Shown here one piece after another: positions 106 to 24,865 of a stretch of 24,865 nucleotides of DNA. Under the pieces are notes generated by a model that worked only from the letters and a program-made list of their open reading frames with translations, searched no databases and had not been told where the DNA came from. Origin of the DNA: Octopus sinensis (taxonomy: Eukaryota); NCBI RefSeq assembly GCF_006345805.1, contig NW_021836198.1, positions 1-24,865 on the forward strand, in the 5' to 3' direction. How positions within the stretch are numbered: the stretch's first letter is position 1; every line of letters starts with the position of its first letter. A program made the translations under genes and the position numbers.

Positions 106-681
106 ATGGTACACGCTATCAAACGAGAAAAGACAAAAACTGAATTTGAGGTTGAAGCAATTCTTGGAGTGAGAACAAATAAAAAGAAGCAAAAAGAATA
201 TCTTATAAAATGGAAAAATTATTCAATGTTATTTAATAATTTGTTTATATAAATTTAGTGATGATAATACATGGGAACCCATAAGAAATTTGCACTGTTC
301 TGAGCTTATTGATGATTTTGAAAATAAAAATCATAATACCAAAAAACAAAATCCGAATTACCGAAATAAATTAAAATTAAATACTTATAAAATCAACAAA
401 TTGGATAACAATCATCAAAACCGTTTATCTTCTACAAGTGTAAGATTCCAATTCATTTGATATTTCAGAGTTCTGAAATCAATTTGAAACAAATTGATAA
501 GATAACAAATATTACTCGTGAAAATGATAATATATTTGTTTATGTGAAATTGTATTATCTTTATAATATAATTTTAAGACAAAACAGTCGAAAGCAACAA
601 AAGATTCCATTAGAGTCTTTACGAGACACGTGTCCAGTCATATTGATTAATTTTTTGATCAGTCGAATCAATTTTAATTAG
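106..681 (+). CDS. HP1: HP1-like heterochromatin protein (chromodomain + chromoshadow), copy 1, type A, intact; exons 106-227, 259-439, 469-551, 579-681; 162 aa
   Basis: The spliced translation is [61 protein letters not shown]...QIDKITNITRENDNIFVYVKLQNSRKQQKIPLESLRDTCPVILINFLISRINFN*. It has the chromodomain motifs EFEVE.I, YLIKWK.Y and NTWEP..NL.C..LI..F with aromatic cage F14/W36/Y39. The C-terminus aligns gap-free to the HP1 chromoshadow pattern (K..NS......P.......CP...I.F...R) once intron 3 is removed. Confidence 0.9.
228..258 (+). other. 31-nt spliceosomal intron 1 of HP1 copy 1
   Basis: GTTATT...TTTAG. Read-through hits TAA; removal gives the canonical [13 protein letters not shown] spacing. 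Confidence 0.9.
440..468 (+). other. 29-nt intron 2 of HP1 copy 1
   Basis: GTAAGA...TTTCAG, phase 0. It joins the hinge to the chromoshadow frame. Length and splice sites are kept in type B copies despite internal substitutions. Confidence 0.85.
552..578 (+). other. 27-nt intron 3 of HP1 copy 1
   Basis: GTATTA...TTAAG. It is in-frame here but contains an in-frame TAA in type B copies; removal restores the chromoshadow register. Confidence 0.85.
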
Positions 682-2674: not shown

Positions 2675-2915
2675 GGTTACATTAAACCAGGTAGTTTTAT
2701 ACATCTACATAAACTTATAGTTGTTTGATGAAACAGGCCCTCCGCAGGAGCTAGGTCGCGGTGAGCGAAGCGAGCTGCCGAGCTAGTTTAATCATAAAAT
2801 ATTAATCTTTCTAACGTGTACTTAATCAACTCGATGTTTACATGACCCCATTTTCGAATAGATGATTCGACATAATCTCTGAGGAATACTAAAGATTGTA
2901 AAAGTAAAGTCACCT

Positions 2916-5430: not shown

Positions 5431-5726
5431 GAAAAGAAATTTATATTCAAGATTGGCTGAGGATGGTAGTTTTTATTCTTGTCACCAATTTTTCCATTTT
5501 TCCTTTTTCTCACAGAATAAACGGCATTACTCTTTGGGAACACTTTACCTATTCTATATGTTCTGTACATGAAGCATGATATACAAAAAATACCGTTAAA
5601 ATTTAGCATTTTAATAATTTTTCTTCTGTTAAAAATGAGTTCTGATTAAATATATTTTAAATTTAATTTGTTTCTTTTAATAATTAACAATTAATTAAAA
5701 TTTATTTAATTGTTATATACTTTCTG

Positions 5727-6302
5727 ATGGTACACGCTATCAAACGAGAAAAGACAAAAACTGAATTTGAGGTTGAAGCAATTCTTGGAGTGAGAACAAA
5801 TAAAAAGAAGCAAAAAGAATATCTTATAAAATGGAAAAATTATTCAATGTTATTTAATAATTTGTTTATATAAATTTAGTGATGATAATACATGGGAACC
5901 CATAAAAAATTTGCACTGTTCTGAGCTTATTGATGATTTTGAAAATAAAATCATAATACCAAAAAACAAAATCCGAATTACCACCGAAATAAATTAAAAT
6001 TAATACTTATAAAATCAACAAATTGGATAACATCATCAAAACCGTTTATCTTCTACAAGTGTAAGATTCCAATTCATTTGATATTTCAGAGTTCTGAAAT
6101 CAATTTGAAACAAATTGATAAGATAACAAATATTACTCGTGAAAATGATAATATATTTGTTAATGTGAAATTGTATTATCTTTATAATATAATTTTAAGA
6201 CAAAACAGTCGAAAGCAACAAAAGATTCCATTAGAGTCTTTACGAGACACGTGTCCAGTCATATTGATTAATTTTTTGATCAGTCGAATCAATTTTAATT
6301 AG
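5727..6302 (+). pseudogene. HP1: HP1-like copy 2 (type A); exon 2 has three 1-bp deletions and a 3-bp insertion
   Basis: Near-identical to copy 1. The indels are mostly single A losses and give an internal stop as written; they could be sequencing error. Confidence 0.75.
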
Positions 6303-6540
6303 ATGTAATTTGAAATTTTTTTGCCTAATGAATAATGTTTTCACATTTAATCATAAAATATTAATCTTTCTAACGTGTACTTAATCAACTAGATGTTTAC
6401 ATGACCCCATCTGGAACAGACTATTGATACATTCTCTGACGGATGTTAAAGATTGTAGAAGCAATATCAATGTTTTTCTTTATATTATTTCTAATTCATT
6501 GACAAATATAAATTTCGTTGTCTAGTTTTTATTTTATTAC

Positions 6541-6747: not shown

Positions 6748-6767
6748 TGGTCCGGAACATATGCACG
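6748..6767 (+). mobile_element. Truncated Tc1 right terminal inverted repeat
   Basis: TGGTCCGGAACATATGCACG is 19/20 identical to the complete end at 8161-8180 and lies 60 bp after the transposase stop. Confidence 0.6.
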
Positions 6768-6839
6768 GGTCAAAATTTACTGATTGCTAAAAATTCAATA
6801 TTGTAAAATTTTATGGAAAAAGAAAAACCATAAAAGTTA

Positions 6840-8080
6840 TTTATTTTTTTTTAGACAACGAAAATCGTTAAGTCCCAGCGGCGAGGACGCAGTGTGCGTT
6901 GCCCAGAACAATGGCCAGGCCGATGCGCTGGCGGAACCAGAGGCCCTCTCTCGTGTCCTTGAGCCTCCTGCCAATGGACTGCCCGACCTCGTTGAGGAAC
7001 GAGTCAGTCTCCTTTCCCGCAGCTCCAGCGGTCTCCAGGGCGATTGCCGTAACGCGGTAGCGGTCCGCGAGCGAAGAATATTTTTGTATTTTGATCTTTT
7101 CGGCGTGGTTTGCAGCCGAACAAGGGTTTGCGGCGGAAGAATGGATCCTCGATTTTGAAAAGGTATCCACAACGGTAACATCCCATACGAGGGCCTTCCC
7201 CGACGAGTACGGGAATATTGTCATCCCGTCAGGCCTTTTGCCATCTCCCCGATCGAGTCCGACCGATTCGAGGAGGCACGAATGGCCCGCCGATTCGAGA
7301 CCGGCCTTCACGATTTCATTGAGCCTGTGTCTGTGTCTGTGTTCCTGCCTGCGCTCCTCTTGCAGGAAAGTAAGTGCAGTCCCTTTCGTCAACGTCCTCA
7401 CCGCATCTGCAGCGGTGTTTTGCACAAACATCCAGGCCGAGACGGTGAGCCACTCCGATGCGTATGGCAGCATCGTCTAGCCACGTCCCGATGCTGGAAA
7501 GAGGAAGAGCATTCAGCCAGCTGGCAGAGTGAGGGGCGGATGCCGCACGAAGGCATGCCAGGCGGTGTTGGTCAAGGGTTGCCGAGAGCTCAGACACACG
7601 CGCTTGGCATGCGATAGAGTCCCAGGCACGTTGGGAGGAGAAATCTTCGGGCCTCTCAGAAAAGGAGCGATCCCAGGTAGTAAGCCCATCCGAAAAAGCA
7701 CCGTCCAGGCAAGATCCGAAAGATTTGAGTAGGATCTCAGAGGCCAGGTTGTTGTACATCGAAAGGGAGGATAGATATGCCAGAAGTGCCAAATCGGATG
7801 CAGTGCGGATTCCCGCACCTCCGAATCTCAGTAGGAACGAGCATTGGGCCCATCCCGGGCCATCGAGGTGGACATTGAGGACGGATTCAGCAGTCTTTTT
7901 CAGGATTGCGTCGTATTTGGCGAGTAGGTCCATATGCAGGAAGCAGGGATTGCTCCTGAGGGTGAAAATGAGTTTCGGCAGATGAATGCTGTTCTTCAGG
8001 AGGAAAAAGGCAGTGTGCGAGTCTAAGATAGATAGGTTTGTTGAAAGTCTTTGGAAGTATTCGGTTTTGGCAGAATTCAT
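6840..8080 (-). mobile_element. 5'-truncated CRE-like non-LTR retrotransposon (post-RT region, CCHC knuckle, RLE endonuclease)
   Basis: ORFs 7316-8080 and 6868-7473 join across frameshifts: GGAGIR, WL.ALP, CRCGEDVD..GLHLLSC, RH..LNE, KRPDGMTIFPY..GKALVWDVTVVDT, KYSSL, IALET.G. GC-rich, with an A-rich tail near 6842-6852. Confidence 0.88.
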
Positions 8081-8157: not shown

Positions 8158-8188
8158 GGGTGGTCCGGAACATTTGCACGCTACTGTA
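8158..8188 (+). mobile_element. Tc1/mariner terminal inverted repeat with flanking TA
   Basis: The reverse complement reads TA-CAGTAGCGTGCAAATGTTCCGGACCACCC, a typical Tc1-type CAGT...GCAAA start after a TA target. Confidence 0.65.
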
Positions 8189-8289: not shown

Positions 8290-9480
8290 TCTACATTTGG
8301 CATCTTCAAGGGCAAGGCCCGTCAGGTTCCAGAATTGAAGGGATACCAGCTCTTTTCAGAGCTTTGTGAATTAGATTGTTAATTTCAGTGTTCCGAGGAA
8401 ATCTAACGGCACTCATTCGACAAGACTGAGGATGTAGCCCAAAGACGTCAACTTTATCCCCACAACGACAGTGGTGGGGTCTGCAGACAGGGCGGAGAAG
8501 GGAATAAATTCAGCCCAAAGCCTGAGTATGGCTGACAGGCGGAACGGAAACAAGCCAGTCTGTGTTGGTCGAGGAGTGGTTCTAGGTCAGTTGAAGATCG
8601 ACGGAAAAAAATTTTGTCCCTGTCTCGCTGAGAAAAGACATCGGAAGGGACTTCAGAAAAATGCGTCTCCAAAGAGCGAGAGCCGAATCAATATCAGAGT
8701 CCAACGATGATTAAGTAGTTTTTTCCAGAATTTTTTGGACAAGAAGATATGATCCAGATGTCGAAGAAAGAAAGGCAAGAAGGGCCAAATCAATACTTGA
8801 ACGGAAGCCCAGACCCCCGTGACTCACAGGAAGTTTAGCCTGACACCAGGTAATATCGTCGAAATACACATTGAGAATTTTCTTTCCATACCTCCGAACC
8901 AAAGAATCATAAGATTCCTGCTTTTGCGTGGCATAAAAACAAGGTGAGGTCCTCAGGATATTAACGATTTTTGGGATCAAAAGATAGTTCTTGAGGATTT
9001 AGTATGAAGGATGAGAATCAATGGCAGAAGGTTTTTCAGATTCTATAAATTTTTTTTGGCAGGGAGAATTCGTGAAGCTGAGTCGGCGAGAATTGGTGAC
9101 CCCAGAATTTTCAAATCATACAGGGGTGTCTCTTTCAACTCAGAAGGAATCCGCAAAAAAAGAGAAGGAGTTCTTAAACAAGGATGGCTCAACAGAGAGA
9201 TTGACAATATCGGTTTTGCTGGAATTAATAACCAGACCAATGTCGGATAAAGCCGGAATTAGACTGGCTAAGTCCTTTAGCAAAACATCAGGCCGACCGC
9301 CCAGGGTACAATCGTCGAGATACCAAAGATTAAGGGGTGATTTATTAACCCGGGCAATGGCATCCACGGCAAGAGCGAACGATAATGGTCCTAAAGGATC
9401 ACCCTGTTGGACGCCACAGGACGAAGAAATGAAAGAACCACCAGCGATTAAAAGTGATGGAAGCCAGTACAAATCAATTT
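8290..9480 (-). mobile_element. Second, diverged CRE-like retrotransposon (RT core to zinc knuckle, degenerate)
   Basis: GVQQGDPLGPLSF, NLWYLDD, KILGSPI, AKLPVSHGGLGFR, CGDKVDVFGLHPQSC..RFPRNTEINNLIHKALKRAGIPSILEP; several frameshifts and internal deletions. Confidence 0.88.
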
Positions 9481-9481
9481 G

Positions 9482-9645
9482 ATGGTACGTGAAATCAAAC
9501 AAAAAAATACAAAAACTGAATTTAAGGTTGAAGCGATTCATGGAGTGAGGATAAATAGAAAGAAAAAAAAAGAATATCTTATAAAATGAAAGAATTATTC
9601 ACTGTTATTTGATAATTTGTTTATATAAATTTAGTGATGATAATA
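9482..9645 (+). pseudogene. HP1: HP1-like copy 3 (B-related): exon 1, intron 1 and 11 nt of exon 2 only; Trp36 changed to TGA
   Basis: MVREIKQKNTKTEFKVEAIHGVRINRKKKKEYLIK*; homology ends at GATGATAATA|TGTCGC. Confidence 0.85.
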
Positions 9646-10100
9646 TGTCGCGAGCGCTGCGAGCGATCGAGCGCTGAGAGCGACTTTGACGCCTAACAAG
9701 CCTGTCATCAACAAATATATTTATTAAATTATTTAAAATTTTAACATGATTTAAAATTAAAATTGAAATAACTTAAGTTTTCCATTGAATCCCATAAAAT
9801 AATTTATAAGTAGACCTTAATATAAAAAGTAAAATCAATGAATACTGAACGCTAATTTGGTTTAGGTTGTGAGGGGGTAATAATTTGACAGATCTCATTG
9901 CTATTTCTCGTTTCAATCTCTAAAATTAGGTCTTCTAATCACAAATGAACTGTGCAGACAGGCTTGCTCCTTCAGAAGATTCTTGTTTTGACATTTTAAT
10001 AAATTATGAAGCATTTAGATTTTTTCTCATTATTCTAAAATATCAATTATAAATTTTAAAATTTTATTTTTATTTATGAAATCGGTTTTAAAGCACATTC
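9646..10100. mobile_element. Putative element beginning TGTCGC with a GC-rich foldback terminus; right boundary unknown
   Basis: Abrupt switch to TGTCGCGAGCGC...GAGCGAC (GTCGC/GCGAC inverted) followed by AT-rich DNA. No matching second terminus was found, so the end coordinate is approximate. Confidence 0.4.
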
Positions 10101-10399
10101 TGCTTTGGCATCGATTTTAATTTTTGTAATCGAATATATTTAAACCCAAATACCAGCCCGGGTATTTGACTTACCTGGAATTTAGAGAGTATATTAACGT
10201 GCTTATTGTTGTTGTGGTGAACATACATGTCAAAAACTCGATTTTTCATTTTACTCTGCCAAATTCCCTTCTCAGATCCTGCAGCTAATCGAAAAAAGAA
10301 ATTCGTTTAAAGGTCGAAAGCATTTCACAATAGACAACGGGATCGAATAAGAGAACTAAATAAAGTCATTTCCAACAAATTAATAAAATTTTATGCCGG

Positions 10400-11580
10400 G
10401 ATCAGCCATATTCCTCACAGGAAATACGATGGACCATGTCTGAAGTCCCTTCTACCTCGGAGAACCCGTGATATAATAATTTTTACTCACGAAGAAGTGT
10501 CCCAGACTATCAAAAATCTAAGAAGGACGGGCTCTTGTGGATCTGATGGAATTTCAACAATTCTGTTGAAGAACCTTGAGAAAGTAGAAATAACAGCCCT
10601 GGTTTAAATCTATAACTTCTCAATAAACAACAATGCAATACCTACCATTTTTCAAGTTTGTCCTTTCCTAAAACCGGGAAAGCCTAAATACGACTTAGCG
10701 TCATATAGACCAATCTCCTTTCCCTGTGTGTTATCTAAAGCTCTGGAAAAGCTGGTACTCGATCAAGTCAAACTTTACCTTCCTGAAATGAATTTCCAAC
10801 ATGGATTCAAAAGTAGGAAATCAACGGACTCAGATCTTACCACGCTGACTACTTTTATCTCGAAAAGACTAACGCTCAAACTCTGCAGCGAAAAGACCGT
10901 CATGTGTTCGGTGGACATTCACAAGGATTTCGACTCCGTGTCTACAAAAATACTGACTAGGACAATATTTCTCAGGAGTATTCCCTCCATCTAAAAAAAG
11001 TGGATAACTAATTTTCTCACTGGGTGAAATTGAAGAATCTATACGAAAAGTACAAATCAAGCTCGAAGTATTTTCCAAATGAAGTACCTCAAGGCTTGCC
11101 TTTATCACCAGCTCTTTTCATATTATACTTATAGATCACACCATTCCAAAAGCTGAATATTTAATTGTTTTACATATACGAATGATATTGTATTTACGAA
11201 TGATAGATAACTTATTTCATGGCTTTACCGAGTACGCCATTTCATTGCTAAACTACTACGTTGGCCTGATCAAATTCGAGACGAGTTAGTACGATGAAAT
11301 GGATCTTATTGTCCAAAGAGTACTTGGAGAAAATCCGTCCACGTGTTGGGAAGCAATAAGGAGAGATTTTACTTGATTCGCGGGCAGCTAGGACGTGGAC
11401 TGAGTAATATCGTACACTTAAGTGAGCGAATTCTTACTAAGATGCACGACACCTTGTGGAGTGGGTCGAGTGTATCCCAAAGGAAGGCTGCCATTCTTGC
11501 TCCTGAAAAAGCGCGTGGTACACACCTAGGGACCATAAAAGACTATGTCTCGGCTAAATATTGTCTAGGTGCTATCTAAG
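10400..11580 (+). mobile_element. Degenerate I/jockey-like LINE reverse transcriptase region
   Basis: FTHEEV..TIKNL...SCGSDGI, LKPGKP...SYRPIS...LSKALEKLV, QHGFKSRKST, VDIHKDFDSV, a frameshifted VPQGLPLSP motif, and WEANKE..LIR.QL. Confidence 0.8.
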
Positions 11581-11819
11581 TTAATGTAAAAAGTTGATCA
11601 AACTTCAGGGGGAATCCCTAATTAAAAAGATCAACTTAAAAGTACTTCAGGCGACTCTCTTAGCAGCCTGGACAACCCGGACATTGACGTATCGTCGTCA
11701 TCAACGGTGCTGAATTATAGCAATAACTCTCCTCAATCAGAATGCTTGCTCTCATATTTCAGGACAGAAACTTTTTTAATGGTCAACGGAAACAGTGAAA
11801 CCACTGTAAAAGTAAGGCG

Positions 11820-11990
11820 GCGAACGTTGACAATTTAGCCACTTAATGCTGGAGTACATGATTACACATGGAGGCATAACGAGGTGGTGAGATCCCTCCA
11901 TCTTCTGCTCTGCAATAAGTATGGCTTGAGGCGGTCCAGAAAGATGCGAAGATGCGAATTCATAGAGTTCTGTCGGTGTCTGAGAATTTT
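11820..11990 (+). mobile_element. R4/NeSL-like (RLE-type) non-LTR retrotransposon fragment
   Basis: VDNLAT.C...DYTWRHNEVVRSLHLLLCNKYGLRRSRKMR, the CCHC end plus RHN motif that precedes the RLE nuclease. Confidence 0.65.
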
Positions 11991-12118
11991 AATAATAGCA
12001 TTTTAATAATATACGTTCTATTAAAAATGTGTTTTGTTTTAATATATTTTAGATTTAATTGTTTTTCTTTTTATAAATAACAATCAATAAAAAATATCTA
12101 ATTGTTATATACTCTCTG

Positions 12119-12687
12119 ATGGTACACGCTATCATACGAGAAAATACAAAAACTGAATTTGAGGTTGAAGCGATTCATGGAGTGAGAATAAATAGGAAGA
12201 AGGAAAAAGAATATCTTATAAAATGGAAGAATTATTCACTGTTATTTGATAATTTTTTTATATAAATTTAGTGATGATAATACATGGGAACCCGTAAGAA
12301 ATTTAAATTGTTCCAAGCTTATTGATGATTTTAAAAAAAAAATCATAATAAAAAAAAATCTTAATTCCCAAAATAAATTGAATTTAAATACTTCTAAAAT
12401 CAACAAATTAGATAGCAATCATCAAAACCGTCTATCTTCTAAAATGTAAAATTTCATTTAATGTTATATTTCAGTGTTCGGAAATCAATTTGACACAAAT
12501 TGACAAGATAACAAATATTACTCGTGAAAATGATAATATATTAGTTTATGTGAAATTGTATTAACTTTATAAAATAATTTTAAGACAAAACAGTCGAAAG
12601 CAACGAAAGATTCCATTGGAGTCTTTACGAGACACGTGTCCAGTCCTTTTAATTAATTTTTTGATCAGTCGAATCAATTTTAATTAG
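12119..12687 (+). pseudogene. HP1: HP1-like copy 4 (type B), full length, one 1-bp deletion just before intron 2
   Basis: MVHAIIRENTKTEFEVEAIHGVRINRKKEKEYLIKWKNYSLDDNTWEPVRNLNCSKLIDDF; all three introns keep GT-AG. The base missing here (ACA) is present in copy 6, so the lesion may be a sequencing error. Confidence 0.75.
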
Positions 12688-12773
12688 ATGTAATTTGAAA
12701 TCATTTTGCCTAATGAATAATTTTTTCTTTCTAACGTGTACTTGATCAAGTAGATGTTTACATGACCTCATTT

Positions 12774-13564
12774 CGAATCAATATCAGAGTCCAACGATGA
12801 TTAAGTAGTTTTTTCCAGAATTTTTTGGACAAGAAGATATGATCCAGATGTCGAAGAAAGAAAGGCAAGAAGGGCCAAATCAATACTTGAACGGAAGCCC
12901 AGACCCCCGTGACTCACAGGAAGTTTAGCCTGACACCAGGTAATATCGTCGAAATACACATTGAGAATTTTCTTTCCATACCTCCGAACCAAAGAATCAT
13001 AAGATTCCTGCTTTTGCGTGGCATAAAAACAAGGTGAGGTCCTCAGGATATTAACGATTTTTGGGATCAAAAGATAGTTCTTGAGGATTTAATATGAAGG
13101 ATGAGAATCAATGGCAGAAGGTTTTTCAGATTCTATAAATTTTTTTTGGCAGGGAGAATTCGTGAAGCTGAGTCGGCGAGAATTGGTGACCCCAGAATTT
13201 TCAAATCATACAGGGGTGTCTCTTTCAACTCAGAAGGAATCCGCAAAAAAAGAGAAGGAGTTCTTAAACAAGGATGGCTCAACAGAGAGATTGACAATAT
13301 CGGTTTTGCTGGAATTAATAACGAGACCAATGTCGGATAAAGCCGGAATTAGACTGGCTAAGTCCTTTAGCAAAACATCAGGCCGACCGCCCAGGGTACA
13401 ATCGTCGAGATACCAAAGATAAGGGGTGATTTATAACCCGGCAATGGCATCCAGCAAGAGCGAACGATAATGGTCCTAAAGGATCACCTGTTGGACGCCA
13501 CAGGACGAAGAAATGAAAGAACCACCAGCGATTAAAAGTGATGGAAGCCAGTACAAATCAATTT
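12774..13564 (-). mobile_element. Duplicate of the second CRE-like fragment
   Basis: Same ORFs as 8711-9480 (e.g. 12801-13070 is identical in the ORF track). Confidence 0.85.
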
Positions 13565-13565
13565 G

Positions 13566-13728
13566 ATGGTACGTGAAATCAAACAAAAAATACAAAAACT
13601 GAATTTAAGGTTGAGCGATTCATGGAGTGAGGATAAATAGAAAGAAAAAAAGAATATCTTATAAAATGAAAGAAAGAATTATCACTGTTATTTGATAATT
13701 TGTTTATATAAATTTAGTGATGATAATA
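13566..13728 (+). pseudogene. HP1: HP1-like copy 5, duplicate of truncated copy 3
   Basis: Same TGA and same GATAATA|TGTCGC breakpoint. Confidence 0.85.
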
Positions 13729-14479
13729 TGTCGCGAGCGCTCGAGCGATCGCGCGCTCGAGAGAGCTGAGAGCGACTTTGACGCCTAACAAGCCTGTCAT
13801 CAACAAATATATTTATAAATTATTTAAAATTTAACATGATTTAAAATTAAAATTGAAATAACTTAAGTTTCCATTGAATCCCATAAAATTTATAAGTAGA
13901 CCTTAATATAAAAAGTAAAATCAATGAATACTGAACGCTAATTTGGTTTAGGTTGTGAGAGGGGGTAATAATTTGACAGATCTCATTGCTATTTCTCGTT
14001 TCAATCTCTAAAATTAGGTCTTCTAATCACAAATGAACTGTGCAGACAGGCTTGCTCCTTCAGAAGATTCTTGTTTTGACATTTTAATAAATTATGAAGC
14101 ATTTAGATTTTTTCTCATTATTCTAAAATATCAATTATAAATTTAAAATTTTATTTTATTTATGAAATCGGTTTTAAAGCACATTCTGCTTTGCATCGAT
14201 TTTAATTTTTGTAATCGAATATATTTAAACCCAAATACCAGCCCGGGTATTTGACTTACCTGGAATTTAGAGAGTATATTAACGTGCTTATTGTTGTTGT
14301 GGGAACATACATGTCAAAAACTCGATTTTCATTTTACTCTGCCAAATTCCTTCTCAGATCCTGCAGCTAATCGAAAAAAGAAATTCGTTTAAAGGTCGAA
14401 AGCATTTCACAATAGACAACGGGATCGAATAAGAGAACTAAATAAAGTCATTTCCAACAAATTAATAAAATTTTATGCC

Positions 14480-15650
14480 GGGATCAGCCATATTCCTCAC
14501 AGGAAATACGATGACATGTCTGAAGTCCCTTCTACCTCGGAGAACCGTGATATAATAATTTTTACTCACGAAGAAGTGTCCCGACTATCAAAATCTAAGA
14601 AGGACGGGCTCTTGTGGATCTGATGGAATTTCAACAATTCTGTTGAAGAACCTTGAGAAGTAGAAATACAGAAATAACAGCCCTGGTTTAAATCTATAAC
14701 TTCTCAATAAACAACAATGCATACCTACCATTTTTCAAGTTTGTCCTTTCCTAAAACCGGGAAAGCCTAAATACGACTTAGCGTCATATAGACCAATCTC
14801 CTTTCCCTGTGTGTTATCTAAAGCTCTGGAAAAGCTGGTACTCGATCAAGTCAAACTTTACCTTCCTGAAATGAATTTCCAACATGGATTCAAAAGTAGG
14901 AAATCAACGGACTCAGATCTTACCACGCTGACTACTTTTATCTCGAAAAGACTAACGCTCAAACTCTGCAGCGAAAAGACCGTCATGTGTTCGGTGGACA
15001 TTCACAAGGATTTCGATCCGTGTCTACAAAAATACTGACTAGGACAATATTTCTCAGGAGTATTCCCTCCATCTAAAAAAAGTGGATAACTAATTTTCTC
15101 ACTGGGTGAAATTGAAGAATCTATACGAAAAGTACAAATCAAGCTCGAAGTATTTCCAATGTGAAGTACCTCAAGGCTTGCCTTTATCACCAGCTCTTTT
15201 CATATTATACTTATTAGATCACACATTCCAAAGCTGAATATTTAATTGTTTTACATATACGAATGATTGTATTTACGAATGATAGATAACTTATTTCATG
15301 GCTTTACCGAGTACGCCATTTCATGCTAAACTACTACGTTGGCCTGATCAAATCGAGACGAGTTAGTACGATGAAATGGATCTTATTGTCCAAAGAGTAC
15401 TTGGAGAAAATCCGTCCACGTGTTGGGAAGCAAATAAGGAGAGATACTTGATTCGCGGGCAGCTAGGACGTGGACTGAGTAATATCGTACACTTAAGTGA
15501 GCGAATTCTTACTAATGCACGACACCTTGTGGAGTGGGTCGAGTGTATCCCAAAGGAAGGCTGCCATTCTTGCTCCTGAAAAAGCGCGTGGTACACACCT
15601 AGGGACCATAAAAGACTATGTCTCGGCTAAATATTGTCTGGTGCTATCTA
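14480..15650 (+). mobile_element. Duplicate of the I/jockey-like RT fragment
   Basis: Matches 10400-11580. Confidence 0.8.
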
Positions 15651-15889
15651 AGTTAATAAAAAAGTGATCAAACTTCAGGGGGAATCCCTAATTAAAAAGA
15701 TCAACTTAAAAGTACTTCAGGCGACTCTCTTAGCAGCCTGGACAACCCGGACATTGACGTATCGTCGTCATCAACGGTGCTGAATTATAGCAATAACTCT
15801 CCTCAATCAGAATGCTTGCTCTCATATTCAGGACAGAAACTTTTTTAATGGTCAACGGAAACAGTGAAACCAACGTGTAAAGTAAGGCG

Positions 15890-16055
15890 GGCGAACGTTG
15901 ACATTTAGCCACTTAATGCTGGGAGTACACCATGATTACACATGGAGGCAACGAGGTGGTGAGATCCCTCCATCTTCTGCTCTGCAATAAGTATGGCTTG
16001 AGGCGGTCCAGAAAGATGCGAAGATGCGAATTCATAGAGTTCTGTCGGTGTCTGA
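15890..16055 (+). mobile_element. Duplicate of the R4/NeSL-like fragment
   Basis: Matches 11820-11990. Confidence 0.62.
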
Positions 16056-16188
16056 GAATTTAATAATAGCATTTTAATAATATACGTTCTATTAAAAATG
16101 TGTTTTGTTTTAATATATTTTAGATTTAATTGTTTTTCTTTTTATAAAAACAATCAATAAAAAATATCTAATTGTTATATACTCTCTG

Positions 16189-16760
16189 ATGGTACACGCT
16201 ATCATACGAGAAAAATACAAAAACTGAATTTGAGGTTGAAGCGATTCATGGAGTGAGAATAAATAGGAAGAAGGAAAAAGAATATCTTATAAAATGGAAG
16301 AATTATTCACTGTTATTTGATAATTTTTTTATATAAATTTAGTGATGATAATACATGGGAACCCGTAAGAAATTTAAATTGTTCCAAGCTTATTGATGAT
16401 TTTTAAAATAAAAATCATAATAAAAAAAAATCTTAATTCCCAAAATAAATTGAATTTAAATACTTCTAAAATCAACAAATTAGATAGCAATCATCAAAAC
16501 CGTCTATCTTCTACAAATGTAAAATTTCATTTAATGTTATATTTCAGTGTTCGGAAATCAATTTGACACAAATTGACAAGATAACAAATATTACTCGTGA
16601 AAATGATAATATATTAGTTTATGTGAAATTGTATTAACTTTATAAAATAATTTTAAGACAAAACAGTCGAAAGCAACGAAAGATTCCATTGGAGTCTTTA
16701 CGAGACACGTGTCCAGTCCTTTTAATTAATTTTTTGATCAGTCGAATCAATTTTAATTAG
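16189..16760 (+). pseudogene. HP1: HP1-like copy 6 (type B), full length, TAA/frameshift in the A-rich hinge
   Basis: Duplicate of copy 4. The lesions lie in homopolymer runs and differ from those of copy 4. Confidence 0.75.
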
Positions 16761-16924
16761 ATGTAATTTGAAATCATTTTGCCTAATGAATAATTTTTTC
16801 TTTCTAACGTGTACTTGATCAAGTAGATGTTTACATGACCTCATTTCGAATAAACGATTGACATAATCTTTGACGAATGTTAAAGATTGTAGAACTAAAA
16901 TCACTGTTTTTCAAAATATTTATT

Positions 16925-17255
16925 TTTAATGTATTTATCCCATGCCATACTCTCTTCTATCCTTCCAGTCAGTCTTTTCCATCCAGCTTTGTTCCTCGCA
17001 GGTCTGGGAATGTCTTCAAGATCGTCACCGGTTTTGAATCAGTCGCCAATTCTTGCATAATCATACCTCAGGCAGAGAAAAGGCGTGCGTCTTGGCCGAC
17101 CATGAAATCCAATTTTGTGATTGGAGAAGTATTCTTCAATGATTTGATTGCAAGGAATCATTTTTTCAATTCTCAGGACATGTCTAAAAAGTCTCCAGCG
17201 TGAAATAGTAACTTCCTTGCTAATCGGATTGCATTTAAATAATTTGTAGAGAGTG
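16925..17255 (-). mobile_element. RTE-like retrotransposon 3' fragment
   Basis: PISKEVTISRWRLFRHVLR...P.NQIIEEYF....FHGRPRRT...DLEDI..ARNKAGWKRL. Confidence 0.8.
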
Positions 17256-17699
17256 TCGATTTTAATGTATATTAAATTCTAGCGATAAGATAATGTGAAT
17301 AAGTTGATCAAACTTCAAAACAAATTTCTAATTAAAAAAAACAACTTCAAGATTCTTTTAGCAGTTTGGACAGCCAGAACACAGTTTGGACACCGTATCA
17401 ACGTCATTAACGTAGCTAAAGTATAAGAATAGCTCTCTAAGATCAGAAGAGTTATTTTTATATTTTGCAGAATAGGAATTTTTTCAATTGTCAGCGGATT
17501 CAATGTAACCACTTTAAAAATAAGGTGTTTATCATTTACGAAACTTTACTGTATTATGATTACAAATTTCTGTTATGGAATAATTATAAATTTGAGACAG
17601 TACAGAGATTTTTTTAAATCTCCAGTTTAATCTGTGTGTGCAAAACTCGATGGTGTGTATTACGGTCAATAATAACGTTGAATCGTATATCAAAATCAG

Positions 17700-18084
17700 T
17701 TGAATAATACCTGCCGCAAGTCGAAGCGGATTCAGACCAGGAAGATCAACATCTGATATAGTATGGAGTCATCGGTGCCTTACTGCCATATGTCAGAAGT
17801 ACAGGAAAACGATGCACATTTTAAGAGCTGACCTATCAAAAGCCTTTGACAGCATCTGCAAAAATAAACTACAGCGGGTTCTCAAGGATATTGTTGATGA
17901 AGACTTCTTGAGGATTGTGCGTTTTGTTCTGGCTGATACGAGCCTCTTAGTGAAAATTGAGAGAGACTATTCGAATAAATTTACCACCGGGATTGGTACT
18001 CCACAGGGAGACTCTCTTTCGCCAGTCCTCTTTATGATCTATTTGGAAGCCGCGTCAAAGGATGTCAGAAAAAAATTGCTGTAG
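17700..18084 (+). mobile_element. RTE-like RT core fragment
   Basis: SGFRPGRSTSDIVWSHR, DLSKAFDSI, GIGTPQGDSLSPVLFMIYLE. Confidence 0.85.
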
Positions 18085-18525
18085 TAGACAAAGCTATAAC
18101 AGTTTTAAAGAGGTGGTCCTTGAAGATCAAACCGGAAAAGACGGACATAACTTCGATTCAGCGGCTTTCGACTCGGAATGACGAGAAGTGAAGCTTTACT
18201 AACAGGCTCGTGTCGCTTTTGCGCGATGCTGAAGACATTGCCTGCTAAAAAAGCTGGCGTCATGTGCAGTAAAAATGTGGAGTATCCGACAAGCCAAAAA
18301 CTTATCTTTAAATCTTTTGACACGCTTGTATAGTACGTTCGTATTACCAATCCTATTATACAACTTAGGAACAAGGGGAAAATCAAAAACGGACCTTAAC
18401 AGATTAGACGTATTTTCTAGAAATCAATTGAAAAAATAATAGAAATCCATAGTCATATTTTCTTTTTAATCTTTTCTTATTTGTCTACCTTAATACCAAT
18501 GAAATAATTCATTCATTACGTGAGT

Positions 18526-18600
18526 CTAGTTGGCTTTTTCAGCGCATTTCGCTCGCGATATTGCGCGGAAACTGCCTATCTATTCGCGCGTCCTCTCAAT
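18526..18600 (-). mobile_element. Candidate Helitron 3' terminus
   Basis: A strong GC hairpin (GCGCATTTCGC-TC-GCGATATTGCGC, 18542-18566) lies 12 nt from CTAG (18526-18529). Caveat: on the minus strand the CTAG is followed by A rather than the usual T. Confidence 0.55.
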
Positions 18601-18819
18601 CAAAGAATTAACATCATAAATTTACTTAATTAACAATTATTTTAAAAAAAAATTCATTTCTGCACCCGAGGAAAGTCAATTTCAGAAACACGGGATTTTA
18701 AACTATCAAATAACACACTCTTAGAGTCTCTTAAAAATAGTTCGCTTTGCAAAGTACAGGTTTATGTTCTTGAGCCTATGTGAATTCCTTCAAGTGAGGA
18801 TTCTCATAGGTAACTTTAT

Positions 18820-19100
18820 ATAAATTTATCCAAATAGTCTCTAGTTATTCTCACTACAAGGCTCGTCGTATCAGCTAGAACAAAACGCTCAATCCTCAAG
18901 AAGTCTTCATCAACAATATCCTCGAGAACCCGCAGTAGTTTATCTCGACAGATACTATCAAAAGCTTTTGATAGGTCAACTCCCAAAATTTGCATCGTTT
19001 TTCTGTACTTCTGACATATGGCAGTAAGCCACCGATGACTCCATACTATATCAGCGGTTGATCTTCCCGGTCTGAATCCGCTTTGACTTAGCGACAGGTT
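18820..19100 (-). mobile_element. Inverted paralog of the RTE-like RT fragment
   Basis: Reverse complement aligns to 17700-17981 (SGFRPGRST..DIVWSHRW, DLSKAFDS). Confidence 0.8.
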
Positions 19101-19269
19101 ATGATTTTGATATACGATTCAATTAACTGATATTAATATACGATTCTATGTTATAATTGACCGTAAAATACACCATCGAGTTTATACACAGAGATTAAAT
19201 GCTTGGTTTGCAAAAATTCCATAAAGAAAATGAAGTTGTTCTTTTAATTAGAAATTTTTTTAATAAGAA

Positions 19270-19520
19270 AACCTAAATTCAGAAAATATTTTTTCATTTC
19301 TTTTGGCGGAAGGGTTAAAGAAACACATCATTTTAGTCGGGGACATGCTTACTGTTCATTTTAACCAAAATCCAGAAAATATTTTTCACTTTTTTTGGCC
19401 AGAAGGTTTAAACGAACTCATCATGTTAGTCGTAGACATGTTGTTGTTCATTATAACCAAAATGCAGAAAATTATTTTAAATTATTTTACAGAAGGTTAA
19501 AGCAACTTATCATGTTAGTC
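19270..19520 (-). repeat. Inverted short array of the ~93-bp minisatellite
   Basis: Reverse complement of 2916-3300-type units, with the same HP1 3' flank junction. Confidence 0.9.
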
Positions 19521-20108
19521 AGGTGAATTTGCTTTTAAAATCTTTAGTATTCCTCAGAGATTATGTCGAATCGTCTATTCGAAAAAGGAGTCATGTAAAC
19601 ATCTAGTTGATTAAGTACACGTTAGAAAGATTAATATTTTATGATTAAATGTGAAAACATTATTCATTAGGCAAAAAAATTTCAAATTACATCTAATTAA
19701 AATTGATTCGACTGATCAAAAAATTAATCAATATGACTGGACACGTGTCTCGTAAAGACTCTAATGGAATCTTTTGTTGCTTTCGACTGTTTTGTCTTAA
19801 AATTATATTATAAAGATAATACAATTTCACATTAACAAATATATTATCATTTTCACGAGTAATATTTGTTATCTTATCAATTTGTTTCAAATTGATTTCA
19901 GAACTCTGAAATATCAAATGAATTGGAATCTTACACTTGTAGAAGATAAACGGTTTTGATGATTGTTATCCAATTTGTTGATTTTATAAGTATTTAATTT
20001 TAATTTATTTCGGTAATTCGGATTTTGTTTTTTGGTATTATGATTTTTATTTTCAAAATCATCAATAAGCTCAGAACAGTGCAAATTTTTTATGGGTTCC
20101 ATGTATTA

Positions 20109-20902
20109 TGTCACATGCCCTGTTCGTTACCATGCCCCGCTCGTTACCATTGCTCTAAATTTTTAAAATTTCAATTTAAAATATTTAAATGATTGAAATA
20201 TATTTACTTATAATTTAAAAATAATAATATTATGGATTTTTATTTTTTCAATGCTTAAACCATTATCATTAAAAAACAATAAATTAAGCATGCTGTTTTA
20301 TCTCATGTTCATGGTTATAGGGTATAGGTTAGGGTTAGGGTATAGGTTAGGGTTAGGGTTAGGGTTTGAAAAATTTAAAGTAGAATTTTCGAATGGAGAT
20401 ACAAAGATTGTTCACATGAAAAGAATCAAAAAAGGACAAATTTAATTTTCGTTTTAAACTTCAGATCTATATATGATTTTAAACTAAAAAATGGATAAAG
20501 TTGAGTTTTTTATAAGAGATCTACAGATGATTTTAAACCTTTATCTTTTACATTTCAAAAAATGTTTTAAATAAAACTAAAAACTGGTTAGAGTTAATTA
20601 TAAAACTATCAAATTATGTGCCTTTAAAGCGTTTCACAACATTCAATTTAAAATATGTTTTAATGTGCTTATCAGTCAAAATGGTTTGTTGTATAAAATA
20701 TTATTTTAATTTATTTGTTTTAAAGCATCTTTTAGTATAATCATTAAATTGTACTCTAATTAACCTAATATATAGGTTGAATTTTATGTCGTTGTGATTG
20801 ATTATTAATTTTTCTAAAAATTGAAAAATCATTAATCAATTATTTCTCAGAAATAATTCGGAGGTAACGAGTGGGGCATAGTAATCCCTGAGGCATGTGA
20901 CA
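20109..20902. mobile_element. Non-autonomous Ginger-like (TGT...ACA) TIR element with 5-bp TSD
   Basis: Ends are TGTCACATGCC...GGCATGTGACA with ~40-bp imperfect TIRs. TATTA is duplicated at 20104-20108 and 20903-20907, and the other HP1 copies show the empty site. Confidence 0.8.
20314..20367 (+). repeat. Telomere-like (TTAGGG)n block inside the TIR element
   Basis: GTTATAGGGTATAGGTTAGGGTTAGGGTATAGGTTAGGGTTAGGGTTAGGGTTT. Confidence 0.85.
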
Positions 20903-21361
20903 TATTATCATCACTAAATTTATATAAACAAATTATTAAATAACATTGAATAATTTTTCCATTTTATAAGATATTCTTTTGCTTCTTTTATTTGTTCTCA
21001 CTCCAAGAATTGCTTCAACCTCAAATTCAGTTTTTGTCTTTTCTCGTTTGTTTGATAGCGTGTACCATCAGAAATTATATAACAATTAAATAAATATAAT
21101 TAATTGTTAATTATTAAAAGAAACAAATTAAATTTAAAATATATTTAATCAGAACTCATTTTTAACAGAAGAAAAATTATTAAAATGCTAAATTTTAACG
21201 GTATTTTTTTGTATATTATGTTTCATGTACAGAACATATAGAATAGGTAAAGTGTTCCCAAAGAGTAATGCCGTTTATTCTGTGAGAAAAAGGAAAAATG
21301 GAAAAATTGGTGACAAGAATAAAAACTACCATCCTCAGCCAATCTTGAATATAAATTTCTT

Positions 21362-23690: not shown

Positions 23691-23982
23691 GAAATTTATA
23701 TTCAAGATTGCCTGAGGATGGTAGTTTTTATTTTTGTCATTAATTTTTCCATTTTTCCTTTTTCTCAGAAAATAAACGGCATTACTCTTTGGGAACACTT
23801 TACCTTTTCTATATGTTCTGTACATGAAGCATGATATACATAAAAACACCGTTAAAATTTAGCATTTTAATAATTTTTCTTCTGTTAAAAATGAGTTCTG
23901 ATTAAATATATTTTAAATTTAATTTGTTTCTTTTAATAATTAACAATTAATTAAAATTTATTTAATTGTTATATACTTTCTG

Positions 23983-24555
23983 ATGGTACACGCTATCAAA
24001 CGAGAAAAGACAAAAACTGAATTTGAGGTTGAAGCAATTCTTGGAGTGAGAACAAATAAAAAGAAGCAAAAAGAATATTATAAATAAAATGGAAAAAATT
24101 ATTCAATGTTATTTAATAATTTGTTTATATAAATTAGTGATGATAATACATGGGAACCATAAGAAATTTGCACTGTTCTGAGCTTATTGATGATTTTGAA
24201 AATAAAAATCATAATACCAAAAAAAACAAATCCGAATTACCGAAATAAATTAAAATTAAATACTTATAAAATCAACAAATTGGATAACAATCATCAAAAC
24301 CGTTTATCTTCTACAAGTGTAAGATTCCAATTCATTTGATATTTCAGAGTTCTGAAATCAATTTGAAACAAATTGATAAGATAACAATATTACTCGTGAA
24401 AATGATAATATATTTGTTTATGTGAATTGTATATCTTTATAATATAATTTAAGACAAAACAGTCGAAAGCAACAAAAGATTCCATTAGAGTCTTTACGAG
24501 ACACGTGTCCAGTCATATTGATTAATTTTTTGATCAGTCGAATCAATTTAATTAG
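23983..24555 (+). pseudogene. HP1: HP1-like copy 8 (type A, same subtype as copy 1), many small indels
   Basis: Shares copy 1's diagnostic bases (ATAAGA, GTTTATGTG) and its downstream Helitron insertion; the indel pattern resembles read error. Confidence 0.75.
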
Positions 24556-24598
24556 ATGTAATTTGAAATTTTTTTGCCTAATGAATAATGTTTTCACA

Positions 24599-24865
24599 TC
24601 TTAATAAAATAGGTATATGGTGTGGTTGTCTGTCTGTCTGTCTGTGTGTGCACACCAACTTCAAATTGGCAATACGATGTCCTCGACTTACATGATGAGG
24701 TCCTAAAACCTTCCCCCCAAAAAAATTAAAAAAAAATTTTCTGCATTTGGTTAAAATGAACAACTACAATGTCCTCGACTTACATGATGAAGTCCTTAAA
24801 ACCTTCCCCCAAACAAATTAAAAAAAATTTCTGCATTTTGGTTAAAATGAACAACTACAATGTCC
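24599..24865 (+). mobile_element. 5' part of a second copy of the Helitron, at the same site as 725, running off the window
   Basis: TCACA|TCTTAATAAAAT...(TCTG)n, then the ~95-bp minisatellite from 24677. Confidence 0.88.

What the first reader, a model, noticed from the sequence alone, without database searches (positions are those of the whole stretch)
9641..20907. Two different TGTC-starting elements inserted at the identical nucleotide of two HP1 paralogs
Seen: read in gene orientation, copy 7 (type A) has GATGA-TAATA|TGTCACATGCC, while copies 3 and 5 (B-related) have GATGA-TAATA|TGTCGCGAGCG. The breakpoint is the same, in the NTWEP motif of the chromodomain, but the inserted sequences diverge after 4 bases and the host alleles differ. 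Inference: independent, recurrent targeting of this site by related integrase-type elements, each disrupting the chromodomain. The alternative is one old insertion later remodelled and spread by gene conversion.
Basis: partly seen in the sequence, partly recalled or inferred. Interest (0 to 1): 0.7.

Follow-up and report, generated by a model that had tools for sequence, protein, structure and literature searches.

The report
Two junctions at one HP1 site
In a repeat-filled array of HP1 chromatin-protein gene copies, one copy holds a small mobile element, and a broken copy of a different allele type ends at exactly the same base next to a different sequence that also starts TGTC; this most likely reflects an ordinary sequence preference of such elements rather than any targeting of HP1.

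Summary
Copies 3 and 5 read GATGATAATA|TGTCGCGAGCG and copy 7 reads GATGATAATA|TGTCACATGCC, at the DDN|TWEP codons of a Pfam-confirmed chromodomain.

Three corrections apply.
1. Copies 3 and 5 are one event. They lie in two units of a 4.1-kb tandem duplication.
2. Only the TGTCAC sequence is a proven insertion. It is 794 bp with no ORF, has terminal inverted repeats (TIRs) matching 11/11 and 31/40, and a 5-bp target-site duplication (TSD), TAATA. Removing it restores a copy 98% identical to copy 1.
3. The TGTCGC sequence is only a one-sided junction. It has no second terminus, no TSD and no 3' half of the gene. Copy 3 is a 166-bp scrap with a truncated LINE on its other side.

The two sequences share no reliable homology beyond TGTC. 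Both fit the TGTNR terminus of Gypsy/Ginger integrase-type elements, and both start with an unusually GC-rich block.

The site is a palindromic TANTA (A|TAATA|C). An HP1 unit holds 8-10 such sites, so reuse is about a 1-in-9 event once both insertions fall in an HP1 unit.

My best reading (about 0.5) is a second, distinct TG-type element that used the same preferred site. The main rival (about 0.3) is that TGTC is a stub of a TGTCAC element. No other genomic copies could be retrieved, so HP1-specific targeting is unsupported.

The parts
20109..20902 (.). TGTCAC element: a 794-bp non-autonomous element with TG...CA ends, inserted in HP1 copy 7. No ORF of 70 aa or more. Contains a (TTAGGG)-like run at 20318-20366.
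   Evidence: Both termini match TGTCACATGCC exactly. It is the only pair with an exact 9-bp terminal inverted repeat and TGT-type ends plus a matching 5-bp TSD in the window scan. Removing it restores a copy 98% identical to copy 1.
20109..20148 (+). Left terminal inverted repeat, with a 17-bp subterminal direct repeat (CATGCCCYGYTCGTTAC, 2.2 copies).
   Evidence: TIR matches 11/11 and then 31/40. Tandem repeat at 20114-20150.
20863..20902 (-). Right terminal inverted repeat. This is the end that abuts the 5' half of copy 7.
20104..20108 (.). Target-site duplication copy 1: TATTA on the + strand, TAATA in gene orientation.
   Evidence: The flanks read GGGTTCCATGTATTA | element | TATTATCATCACTAA.
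20903..20907 (.). Target-site duplication copy 2 (TATTA / TAATA).
20903..21172 (-). HP1 copy 7, 5' half (exon 1, intron 1 and the start of exon 2, up to the DDN codons).
   Evidence: Blastn against copy 1 gives 96.7%. Alignment.
19636..20108 (-). HP1 copy 7, 3' half (TWEP onward, including the chromoshadow exons).
   Evidence: Blastn against copy 1 gives 98.95%.
9480..9645 (+). HP1 copy 3: a 166-bp orphan fragment (5' part of the chromodomain, with W>stop), ending at TAATA.
   Evidence: The left edge abuts a 5'-truncated minus-strand LINE reverse transcriptase (RT).
9646..10225 (+). TGTCGC segment: the first 40 nt are 68% GC and made of GAGCG-type short repeats, followed by AT-rich non-coding DNA. 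The right limit is approximate, where the + strand LINE RT pseudogene begins.
   Evidence: No partner inverted terminus within 9600-12100. No other copy in the window.
13564..13728 (+). HP1 copy 5: a duplicate of copy 3 made by the 4.1-kb tandem duplication.
13729..14305 (+). Duplicate of the TGTCGC segment. It has a 10-nt length difference inside the GC-rich block.
8684..12773 (+). Unit 1 of the tandem segmental duplication: LINE fragment, copy 3, TGTCGC segment, LINE RT pseudogene, repeat X, copy 4.
   Evidence: 8684-12778 matches 12774-16851 at 97.7% over 4130 nt. The junction shows CGAAT microhomology, read directly.
12774..16851 (+). Unit 2 of the tandem segmental duplication (contains copies 5 and 6).
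8292..9479 (-). 5'-truncated LINE with RT (YLDD) and a restriction-like endonuclease tail. It forms the left boundary of the copy 3 fragment.
   Evidence: Pfam RVT_1 E=3.5e-7. Profile hit at 8509-8309, E=4e-20.
10262..11580 (+). LINE RT pseudogene with many stops. It bounds the TGTCGC segment on the right.
   Evidence: Pfam RVT_1 E=1.2e-8. Frames shown.
265..269 (+). Unoccupied TAATA site in copy 1. The same clean site is at 5886-5890 (copy 2), 12278-12282 (copy 4), 16349-16353 (copy 6) and 24144-24148 (copy 8).
   Evidence: No footprint in any intact copy.

Best explanation
Two separate events hit the same TAATA in two diverged HP1 paralogs.

Event 1 is shown. A 794-bp non-autonomous element with TG...CA ends, roughly 40-bp imperfect inverted repeats and subterminal repeats integrated into copy 7 by a 5-bp staggered cut. 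This duplicated TAATA and split the chromodomain at DDN|TWEP.

Event 2 is inferred. In the ancestor of copies 3 and 5, a different element whose terminus begins TGTCG integrated at the same pentamer. Like the first element, it starts with a GC-rich terminal block followed by AT-rich DNA. Later LINE insertions and rearrangements removed its far end and the 3' half of the gene. A 4.1-kb tandem duplication then copied the wreck.

The shared site is explained by target preference, not by HP1 biology. TAATA is an odd-length palindrome (TA-N-TA) in the context A|TAATA|C. This is the 5-bp analogue of the RTATAY preference reported for Ginger2, whose termini, like those of Gypsy LTRs, follow TGTNR.

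The superfamily assignment (Ginger2/TDD-like MITE or a solo LTR) is inferred from anatomy only. No transposase or integrase gene is present in the window.
For: - The junctions are identical at the base level.
- The copy 7 element has all the hallmarks of an insertion: TIR 11/11 and 31/40, TSD TATTA, and an empty-site reconstruction that is 729/743 identical to copy 1.
- Copies 3 and 7 belong to different allele groups, and all five intact copies have a clean site. One inherited insertion would therefore need several precise losses.
- Both starts fit TGTNR (TGTCA and TGTCG). Published values for comparison: Ginger2 has 4-bp TSDs, or 5-bp in TDD-4/5, with an RTATAY target (PMC2836005). TSD lengths are 4 or 5 bp for Ginger2 and 3-6 bp for LTR elements (PMC10045372).
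- The first 40 nt after the copy 3/5 junction are 68-70% GC. Only 0.6% of 40-nt windows outside the GC-rich LINE block reach 60% (2.5% window-wide). The proven element's ends are 53-57% GC. A GC-rich block that starts exactly at the junction is what a TIR would give, and is improbable for an arbitrary fusion partner.
- TANTA occurs 8-10 times per 740-bp HP1 unit and 178 times in the window. Site reuse under a TANTA preference is therefore unremarkable.
Against: - For the TGTCGC sequence there is only one boundary. There is no inverted partner, no second TAATA, and no orphan 3' half of the gene anywhere in the window.
- No second copy exists in the window to show that homology between copies ends at TGTC.
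- The only near match, TATCGCGAGCG at 18550-18560(-), lies in the coding tail of a LINE. It is not a terminus.
- Copy 3 is a 166-bp scrap whose other side is also a rearrangement junction, so the locus is heavily reworked.
- Similarity between the TGTCGC segment and the TGTCAC element beyond TGTC did not survive a reciprocal control.
- No genome-wide copies could be obtained.
Confidence: 0.5

Rival explanations
1. TGTC in copies 3/5 is a 4-base stub of a TGTCAC-type element that once sat there. The stub could have been left by aberrant excision with misrepair, by a deletion, or by a nested insertion 4 bases inside the terminus. The GC-rich sequence beyond it would then be unrelated DNA. On this reading only one element family is involved. 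The site was still hit twice, or the insertion was moved between paralogs.
For: Only one element family has demonstrated mobility and this target. This reading explains why no partner terminus, TSD or 3' gene half exists, and why the locus is a scrap bounded by LINEs. The last 34 bases of HP1 before the junction are identical in copies 3 and 7, including one site where copies 4/6 differ.
Against: It needs a breakpoint exactly 4 bases into a 794-bp element. It also needs a fusion partner that happens to begin with a block of 68-70% GC, a composition found in 0.6-2.5% of windows. It still requires a TGTCAC-type element in the copy 4/6 lineage, and none is seen there.
Confidence: 0.3
2. One old insertion in an ancestral HP1 copy, later remodelled and spread or erased by gene conversion among the tandem paralogs.
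For: Tandem paralogs commonly undergo gene conversion. Copy 3 carries the copy 1/2/7/8 state at the diagnostic site nearest the junction.
Against: Five intact copies from both allele groups have a clean TAATA with no footprint. Copy 3's three sites with the other group's state are scattered, not clustered at the junction, which fits retained ancestral states. The two inserted sequences share nothing demonstrable after 4 bases. The emptied copy 7 is 98% identical to copy 1, which suggests a recent insertion.
Confidence: 0.08
3. The TGTCGC segment is a piece of another known kind of repeat, and the match to the TGTCAC junction is coincidence or an assembly artefact. Candidates are a Helitron 3' end on the minus strand or the 3' coding tail of a LINE that carries a restriction-like endonuclease (RLE).
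For: The reverse complement ends in a GC-rich hairpin. It shows weak similarities to the Helitron-like 3' end at 2700-2786 (p=0.04 and p<0.003 on mononucleotide shuffles, in opposite orientations). There is a 10/11 match to a LINE tail at 18550-18560. The assembly is noisy.
Against: There is no CTRR end, and the junction is G|T rather than A|T. The hairpin is not better than shuffled sequence (z -0.45 to -1.15). A 71-sequence profile of the LINE tail finds the three LINE copies (E=1.6e-67, 4e-20, 3.6e-6) but not this segment, and tblastn is also negative. A same-base junction plus 4 shared bases is about 1e-5 by chance. The junction appears in both duplication units with different error patterns.
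Confidence: 0.07
4. Integrase-type elements home specifically to the chromodomain-coding site of HP1 genes.
For: Two junctions lie at one base of the DNTWEP codons in two diverged paralogs. Under a TANTA-only model, a second window-wide hit at a homologous site has a probability of about 0.02-0.05.
Against: There are only two events. The site is a generic AT-rich palindrome. Six of eight copies are unoccupied. No targeting domain or protein is available to examine. Insertions are tolerated in a decaying multicopy array, so ascertainment bias is strong.
Confidence: 0.04

Closest known systems
Ginger2/TDD cut-and-paste DNA transposons and their MITE derivatives (Bao, Kapitonov and Jurka 2010, PMC2836005; Ginger2_NA MITEs, PMC3845634)
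   Same: TGTNR termini (TGTCA, TGTCG). TG...CA ends. TIRs of tens of bp. A 5-bp TSD, as in TDD-4/TDD-5. An AT-rich palindromic target: A|TAATA|C here against RTATAY/TATA. Short non-coding derivatives with AT-rich interiors.
   Different: Most metazoan Ginger2 families make 4-bp TSDs. The TIR here is about 40 bp and imperfect, against the 50-180 bp reported. No integrase-like transposase is present, so membership is untested.
Solo LTR of a Gypsy, BEL or Copia LTR retrotransposon
   Same: TG...CA ends with TGTNR. A 5-bp TSD. A size of about 0.8 kb. No ORF.
   Different: A 31/40 terminal inverted repeat with subterminal direct repeats is long for an LTR. The window holds no second LTR, no PBS/PPT and no gag-pol remnant of LTR type; all RT remnants are LINE-type.
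Target-sequence-preferring integrase-type elements that reuse short AT-rich palindromes, such as the Ginger2 RTATAY preference (PMC2836005) and the TATA preference of Ginger2_NA MITEs (PMC3845634)
   Same: Independent insertions can land on the same short motif, so paralogous sequences can be hit at the homologous base.
   Different: Here the second event is known from one junction only, and no target logo could be built.
Young, lineage-restricted HP1 paralog amplifications (Helleu and Levine 2018, PMC6188558)
   Same: A cluster of closely related chromodomain plus chromoshadow genes, several of them decaying, embedded in repeat-rich DNA.
   Different: The organism is unknown. Under my gene model only copy 1 reads open, and the noisy assembly prevents judging which copies are functional.

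Membership tests
Ginger2/TDD DNA transposon (non-autonomous derivative) | Termini follow TGTNR ... YNACA (TG...CA) | tested here: met
   The TGTCAC element has TGTCA at both ends. The TGTCGC junction begins TGTCG. The pattern is taken from PMC2836005.
Ginger2/TDD DNA transposon (non-autonomous derivative) | Terminal inverted repeats of about 50-180 bp | tested here: inconclusive
   The TGTCAC element matches 11/11 and then 31/40, with similarity fading after about 40 bp. The TGTCGC sequence has only one end.
Ginger2/TDD DNA transposon (non-autonomous derivative) | TSD of 4 bp (5 bp in TDD-4/5) | tested here: met
   The TGTCAC element has a 5-bp TATTA on both sides, and the empty site is restored on removal. 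This cannot be tested for the TGTCGC sequence.
Ginger2/TDD DNA transposon (non-autonomous derivative) | Preference for an AT-rich palindromic target (RTATAY) | tested here: inconclusive
   The single site A|TAATA|C fits an R-TANTA-Y analogue. One or two sites cannot define a preference.
Ginger2/TDD DNA transposon (non-autonomous derivative) | Autonomous partner encoding an integrase-like H2C2 + DDE transposase | not testable with these tools
Solo LTR | TG...CA ends and a 4-6-bp TSD | tested here: met
Solo LTR | Identity to the LTRs of a full-length element (PBS/PPT, gag-pol) | not testable with these tools
   No LTR-type coding remnant and no second copy in the window.
MITE | Short, non-coding, with TIRs and a TSD | tested here: met
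   794 bp, no ORF of 70 aa or more, with TIRs and a TSD.
MITE | Many homogeneous copies in the genome | not testable with these tools
   There is a single copy in the window.
Helitron 3' end (for the TGTCGC segment read on the minus strand) | 3' CTRR terminus with insertion between A and T | tested here: not met
   The strand ends ...GCGACA and the host junction is G|T. By contrast, the Helitron-like element at about 725-2786 ends CTAG|T.
Helitron 3' end (for the TGTCGC segment read on the minus strand) | Subterminal GC-rich hairpin about 10 nt from the end | tested here: inconclusive
   A hairpin is predicted, but it reaches the last base and is not better than shuffles (z -1.15 and -0.45).
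3' tail of an RLE-type LINE (for the TGTCGC segment read on the minus strand) | Encodes the conserved C-terminal tail (FL.E.G..I...RE..L.QRISLAI.RGN) | tested here: not met
   A profile of 71 sequences hits LINE copies at 7476-6871, 8509-8309 and 18453-18608 but not 9646-9770 or 13729-13860. tblastn is negative at E<=50.
HP1 family (host gene) | N-terminal chromodomain plus C-terminal chromoshadow domain | tested here: met
   Pfam Chromo E=2.8e-18 and Chromo_shadow E=1.1e-7 on the spliced copy 1 model.

The most novel reading that the evidence does not exclude
A lineage of integrase-type (TG...CA, 5-bp TSD) elements with at least two subfamilies homes to the DNTWEP-coding site of HP1 chromodomain genes. 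On this reading it repeatedly knocks out paralogs of the protein family that reads heterochromatin marks, as a transposon counter-measure against silencing or a self-limiting safe haven.
Probability: 0.04. Interest if true: 0.75.

Novelty: new member of a known kind. Interest (0 to 1): 0.25.

Why it matters
If the two-element reading holds, this is a small, clean example of insertion homoplasy. Distinct elements that share TGTNR ends reuse one palindromic pentamer in paralogous genes. That is a caution for anyone using shared insertion sites as markers of common descent, and a hint at the target logo of a poorly sampled group with 5-bp TSDs. It would matter much more only if a genome-wide census showed enrichment in HP1 genes beyond what the frequency of the motif predicts. 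Nothing here shows that.

Tried and rejected
1. Retrieving other genomic copies failed.
- A protein search with the HP1 model gave one irrelevant chromovirus hit.
- An exact look-up of a window ORF found nothing.
- A viral-contig scan for the HP1 exon gave 0 matches.
- I spent the single metagenome scan on the 16-mer junction GTGATGATAATATGTC. It returned 120 chance matches, none of which contains the longer junction. That was a poor choice of pattern.
- LINE ORF searches gave only 40-54% relatives from unnamed metagenome contigs and one tardigrade protein. The organism stays unknown.

2. Homology between the TGTCGC segment and the TGTCAC element was tested and not established. Blastn gave only scattered AT-rich hits in many registers. 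With the TGTCGC segment as query, a 47-nt match to the element's left end scored 43 against a null maximum of 33. With the element's left end as query, it scored 43-46 against unrelated loci. I rejected the match as low-complexity stickiness.

3. I first took the 10/11 match TATCGCGAGCG at 18550-18560(-) (0.03 expected) for a second terminus. I rejected that because the site lies in the coding tail of a LINE.

4. The TGTCGC segment as a LINE tail was rejected.

5. The TGTCGC segment as a Helitron 3' end was rejected: no CTRR, no A|T junction, and a non-significant hairpin.

6. A scan for other TG-type pairs with an exact 9-bp terminal inverted repeat and a TSD found only the known element.

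7. Rfam and tRNA scans found nothing.

Full report
**Setting**

The window is AT-rich eukaryotic DNA (24-42% GC, apart from a 55% GC block at 7-8 kb) and is full of repeats.

It holds eight units of one gene:
- copy 1 at 1-739
- copy 2 at 5622-6359
- copy 3 at 9480-9645
- copy 4 at 12016-12727
- copy 5 at 13564-13728
- copy 6 at 16087-16800
- copy 7 on the minus strand at 21172-20903 and 20108-19636
- copy 8 at 23878-24605

I spliced copy 1 at three very short introns (31, 29 and 27 nt). This gives a 162-163-residue protein with a Pfam chromodomain (E=2.8e-18) and chromoshadow domain (E=1.1e-7), so 'HP1 paralogs' is a fair name. Under this model only copy 1 reads open. The assembly is noisy, so this says little about which copies function.

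The words 'type A' and 'B-related' in the finding refer to allele groups of the gene: copies 1/2/7/8 against copies 4/6, with copies 3/5 nearer the latter.

**The observation**

TAATATGTC occurs three times against 0.29 expected. In the alignment of all copies:
- the five intact copies read GTGATGATAATA|CATGGGAACC
- copies 3 and 5 read ...TAATA|TGTCGCGAGCG
- copy 7 reads ...TAATA|TGTCACATGCC

The break lies in GAT GAT AAT A|CA TGG GAA CCC, which encodes DDN|TWEP.

**First correction: copies 3 and 5 are one event**

Window 8684-12778 and 12774-16851 are two units of a tandem duplication, 97.7% identical over 4.1 kb. They differ by 50 indels, mostly of 1-2 nt, and 25 substitutions, many of them next to indels. 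The units are therefore essentially identical copies seen through assembly noise. The duplication junction shows CGAAT microhomology (read). There are two junction events in the window, not three.

**The copy 7 sequence is a real insertion**

- It spans 20109-20902 (794 bp).
- Its ends are TGTCACATGCC ... GGCATGTGACA. The inverted repeat matches 11/11 and then 31/40.
- The left end carries a 17-bp subterminal direct repeat.
- It has no ORF of 70 aa or more.
- TATTA (TAATA in gene orientation) flanks it on both sides.
- Joining the flanks with one TAATA gives a unit 729/743 identical to copy 1, with the clean site GATGATAATACATGG.

TG...CA ends with a 5-bp duplication are the anatomy of integrase-type elements. 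Bao et al. report TGTNR termini for Ginger and most Gypsy elements, 5-bp TSDs for TDD-4/5, and an RTATAY target for Ginger2 (PMC2836005). Kojima lists TSDs of 4 or 5 bp for Ginger2 and 3-6 bp for LTR elements (PMC10045372). The long inverted repeat and subterminal repeats favour a MITE-like DNA element over a solo LTR. Without a coding partner, neither assignment can be tested.

**The copy 3/5 sequence is only a junction**

- Copy 3 is a 166-bp scrap.
- Its left edge (9479|9480) abuts the 5'-truncated end of a minus-strand LINE (RVT_1, YLDD).
- Its right edge is TAATA|TGTCGCGAGCG.
- About 580 bp of non-coding sequence follow. The first 40 nt are 68-70% GC and made of GAGCG-type short repeats. 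The rest is AT-rich.
- Next come a plus-strand LINE RT pseudogene (10262 to about 11580), a repeat also seen at 17300-17560, and then the upstream region of copy 4.
- The window contains no inverted partner of TGTCGCGAGCG, no second TAATA next to such a partner, and no orphan 3' half of the gene. ACATGGGAACC occurs only in the six copies that have a 3' half.
- The segment has no other copy in the window.

**Is the TGTCGC sequence related to the TGTCAC element?**

Beyond TGTC, 3 of the next 7 bases agree. Blastn gives only AT-rich matches in many registers.

A 47-nt local match to the element's left end looked significant when the TGTCGC segment was the query: score 43, against a maximum of 33 in 848 real windows, with Gumbel p about 1e-3. 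The reciprocal control failed. The element's left end scores 43-46 against unrelated loci. I treat the match as unproven.

So the segment is not demonstrably a deletion derivative of the TGTCAC element, and it is not demonstrably a relative either.

**Other identities tested for the TGTCGC segment**

1. *A second terminus at 18550-18560(-).* TATCGCGAGCG matches 10/11 where 0.03 matches are expected. That locus proved to be the coding tail of a plus-strand LINE (RESSWLFQRISLAILRGN). The tail is homologous to that of the LINE at 6868-7473 (tblastn E=4e-4) and to a profile of 70 database homologues (E=3.6e-6). It is therefore not a transposon end.
2. *A decayed LINE tail.* The same profile and tblastn find nothing in the TGTCGC segment.
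3. *A Helitron 3' end on the minus strand.* There is no CTRR end. The host junction is G|T rather than A|T. The terminal hairpin is no better than shuffled sequence. Weak similarities to the Helitron-like 3' end at 2700-2786 lie in opposite orientations and are borderline.

**Weighing the explanations**

A random breakpoint at the same base with four shared bases is about 1/700 x 1/256, so pure chance is out.

Copies 3 and 7 belong to different allele groups, and every intact copy of both groups has a clean site. A single inherited insertion would need several precise losses or erasures by gene conversion. Copy 3's three sites with the other group's state are scattered, not clustered at the junction.

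Two serious readings remain.

*(a) A second element whose terminus is TGTCG used the same pentamer.*
- For it: the TGTNR fit, and the GC-rich block that starts exactly at the junction. Only 0.6% of 40-nt windows outside the GC-rich LINE block reach 60% GC, or 2.5% window-wide. The proven element's ends are 53-57% GC.
- Site reuse is cheap under a palindromic TANTA preference. There are 8-10 TANTA and 3-6 R-TANTA-Y sites per HP1 unit and 178 TANTA sites in the window. That gives about 1 in 9 once both insertions fall in an HP1 unit, and about 0.02-0.05 window-wide.

*(b) TGTC is a 4-base stub of a TGTCAC-type element, fused to unrelated DNA by aberrant excision repair, a deletion or a nested insertion.*
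- For it: only one proven family is needed, and the missing far side is explained.
- Against it: a break exactly 4 bases in, and a partner that happens to begin with a rare GC-rich block.

I put (a) at about 0.5 and (b) at about 0.3. Gene conversion of one old insertion gets about 0.08, another repeat or an artefact about 0.07, and HP1-specific homing about 0.04.

**What is and is not shown**

Shown:
- both junctions
- the duplication that links copies 3 and 5
- the insertion status and anatomy of the TGTCAC element
- the palindromic target
- the absence in the window of any second end for the TGTCGC sequence

Inferred:
- that TGTCG is a transposon terminus
- the superfamily assignment
- that target preference explains the reuse of the site

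Not shown: any targeting of HP1 or of the chromodomain as such.

The decisive test is a genome-wide census of both termini with target logos. I could not run it because the source genome is not in any collection I could reach, and I wasted the one metagenome scan on a pattern that was too short.

**Verdict**

This is a correct and careful observation. The thing itself is an ordinary kind of event, a non-autonomous TG...CA element in a decaying multicopy gene array, with a mildly interesting site coincidence. Interest 0.25.

Noticed in passing
window 725-2786 (also from 24606 after copy 8): A Helitron-like insertion lies downstream of copy 1. It has a 5' TC and a 3' CTAG followed by T. The empty site is visible in copy 2 (CACA|TTTAATC at 6345|6346). 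It carries a 95-bp satellite array and, near its 3' end, a helicase C-terminal remnant (FAMTINKAQGQSL...FSHGQLYV; Pfam Herpes_Helicase E=5e-5, below the cut-off). The first 15 nt resemble the target, so the exact 5' limit (725 or 740) is ambiguous.
   Followed up: partly
window 797-1690, 2916-3766, 19270-19520, 24670-24865: A family of 92-95-bp tandem repeats occurs in four arrays: 9.4 copies at 94% identity, and older arrays at 78-80%. One array lies inside the Helitron-like element. There is no Rfam match.
   Followed up: partly
window 20318-20366: A (TTAGGG)-like run (TAGGGT x 8, with TATAGG variants) lies inside the 794-bp TGTCAC element.
   Followed up: no
window 6868-8080 and about 8292-9479 (minus strand); tail at 18453-18608 (plus strand): These are LINE copies with a restriction-like endonuclease motif (RPD...WDVTVVD) and a conserved C-terminal tail. 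Seventy homologues turned up in unnamed metagenome contigs, plus one in the tardigrade Paramacrobiotus metropolitanus, at 37-66% identity. The GC-rich copy at 6868-8080 still has long open frames.
   Followed up: partly
window 8684-12773 / 12774-16851: This is a 4.1-kb tandem duplication with CGAAT microhomology at its junction. The units differ almost only by 1-2-nt indels. The assembly therefore looks like weakly polished long-read data, and frameshifts in the gene copies should not be trusted.
   Followed up: yes
window 108-683 (copy 1 gene model): The HP1 gene has three introns of only 31, 29 and 27 nt with GT...AG ends. This is unusual for most animals and a possible clue to the unknown source organism.
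   Followed up: no
window 17626-17983 and 18821-19199: Two 83%-identical LINE RT segments lie in inverted orientation, about 840 bp apart.
   Followed up: no
window 11587-11995 and 17300-17560: An unclassified repeat ('X') sits next to LINE fragments in both places.
   Followed up: no
window 6749-6775 and 8158-8185: The motif GGTCCGGAACAT(A/T)TGCACG recurs in direct orientation on either side of the GC-rich LINE copy. It may be the ends of another element.
   Followed up: no
window 18550-18560: TATCGCGAGCG is a 10/11 match to the TGTCGC junction sequence (0.03 expected by chance). It lies in LINE coding sequence (ISLAI). Whether this is coincidence or a trace of the origin of the GC-rich block is unresolved.
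   Followed up: yes
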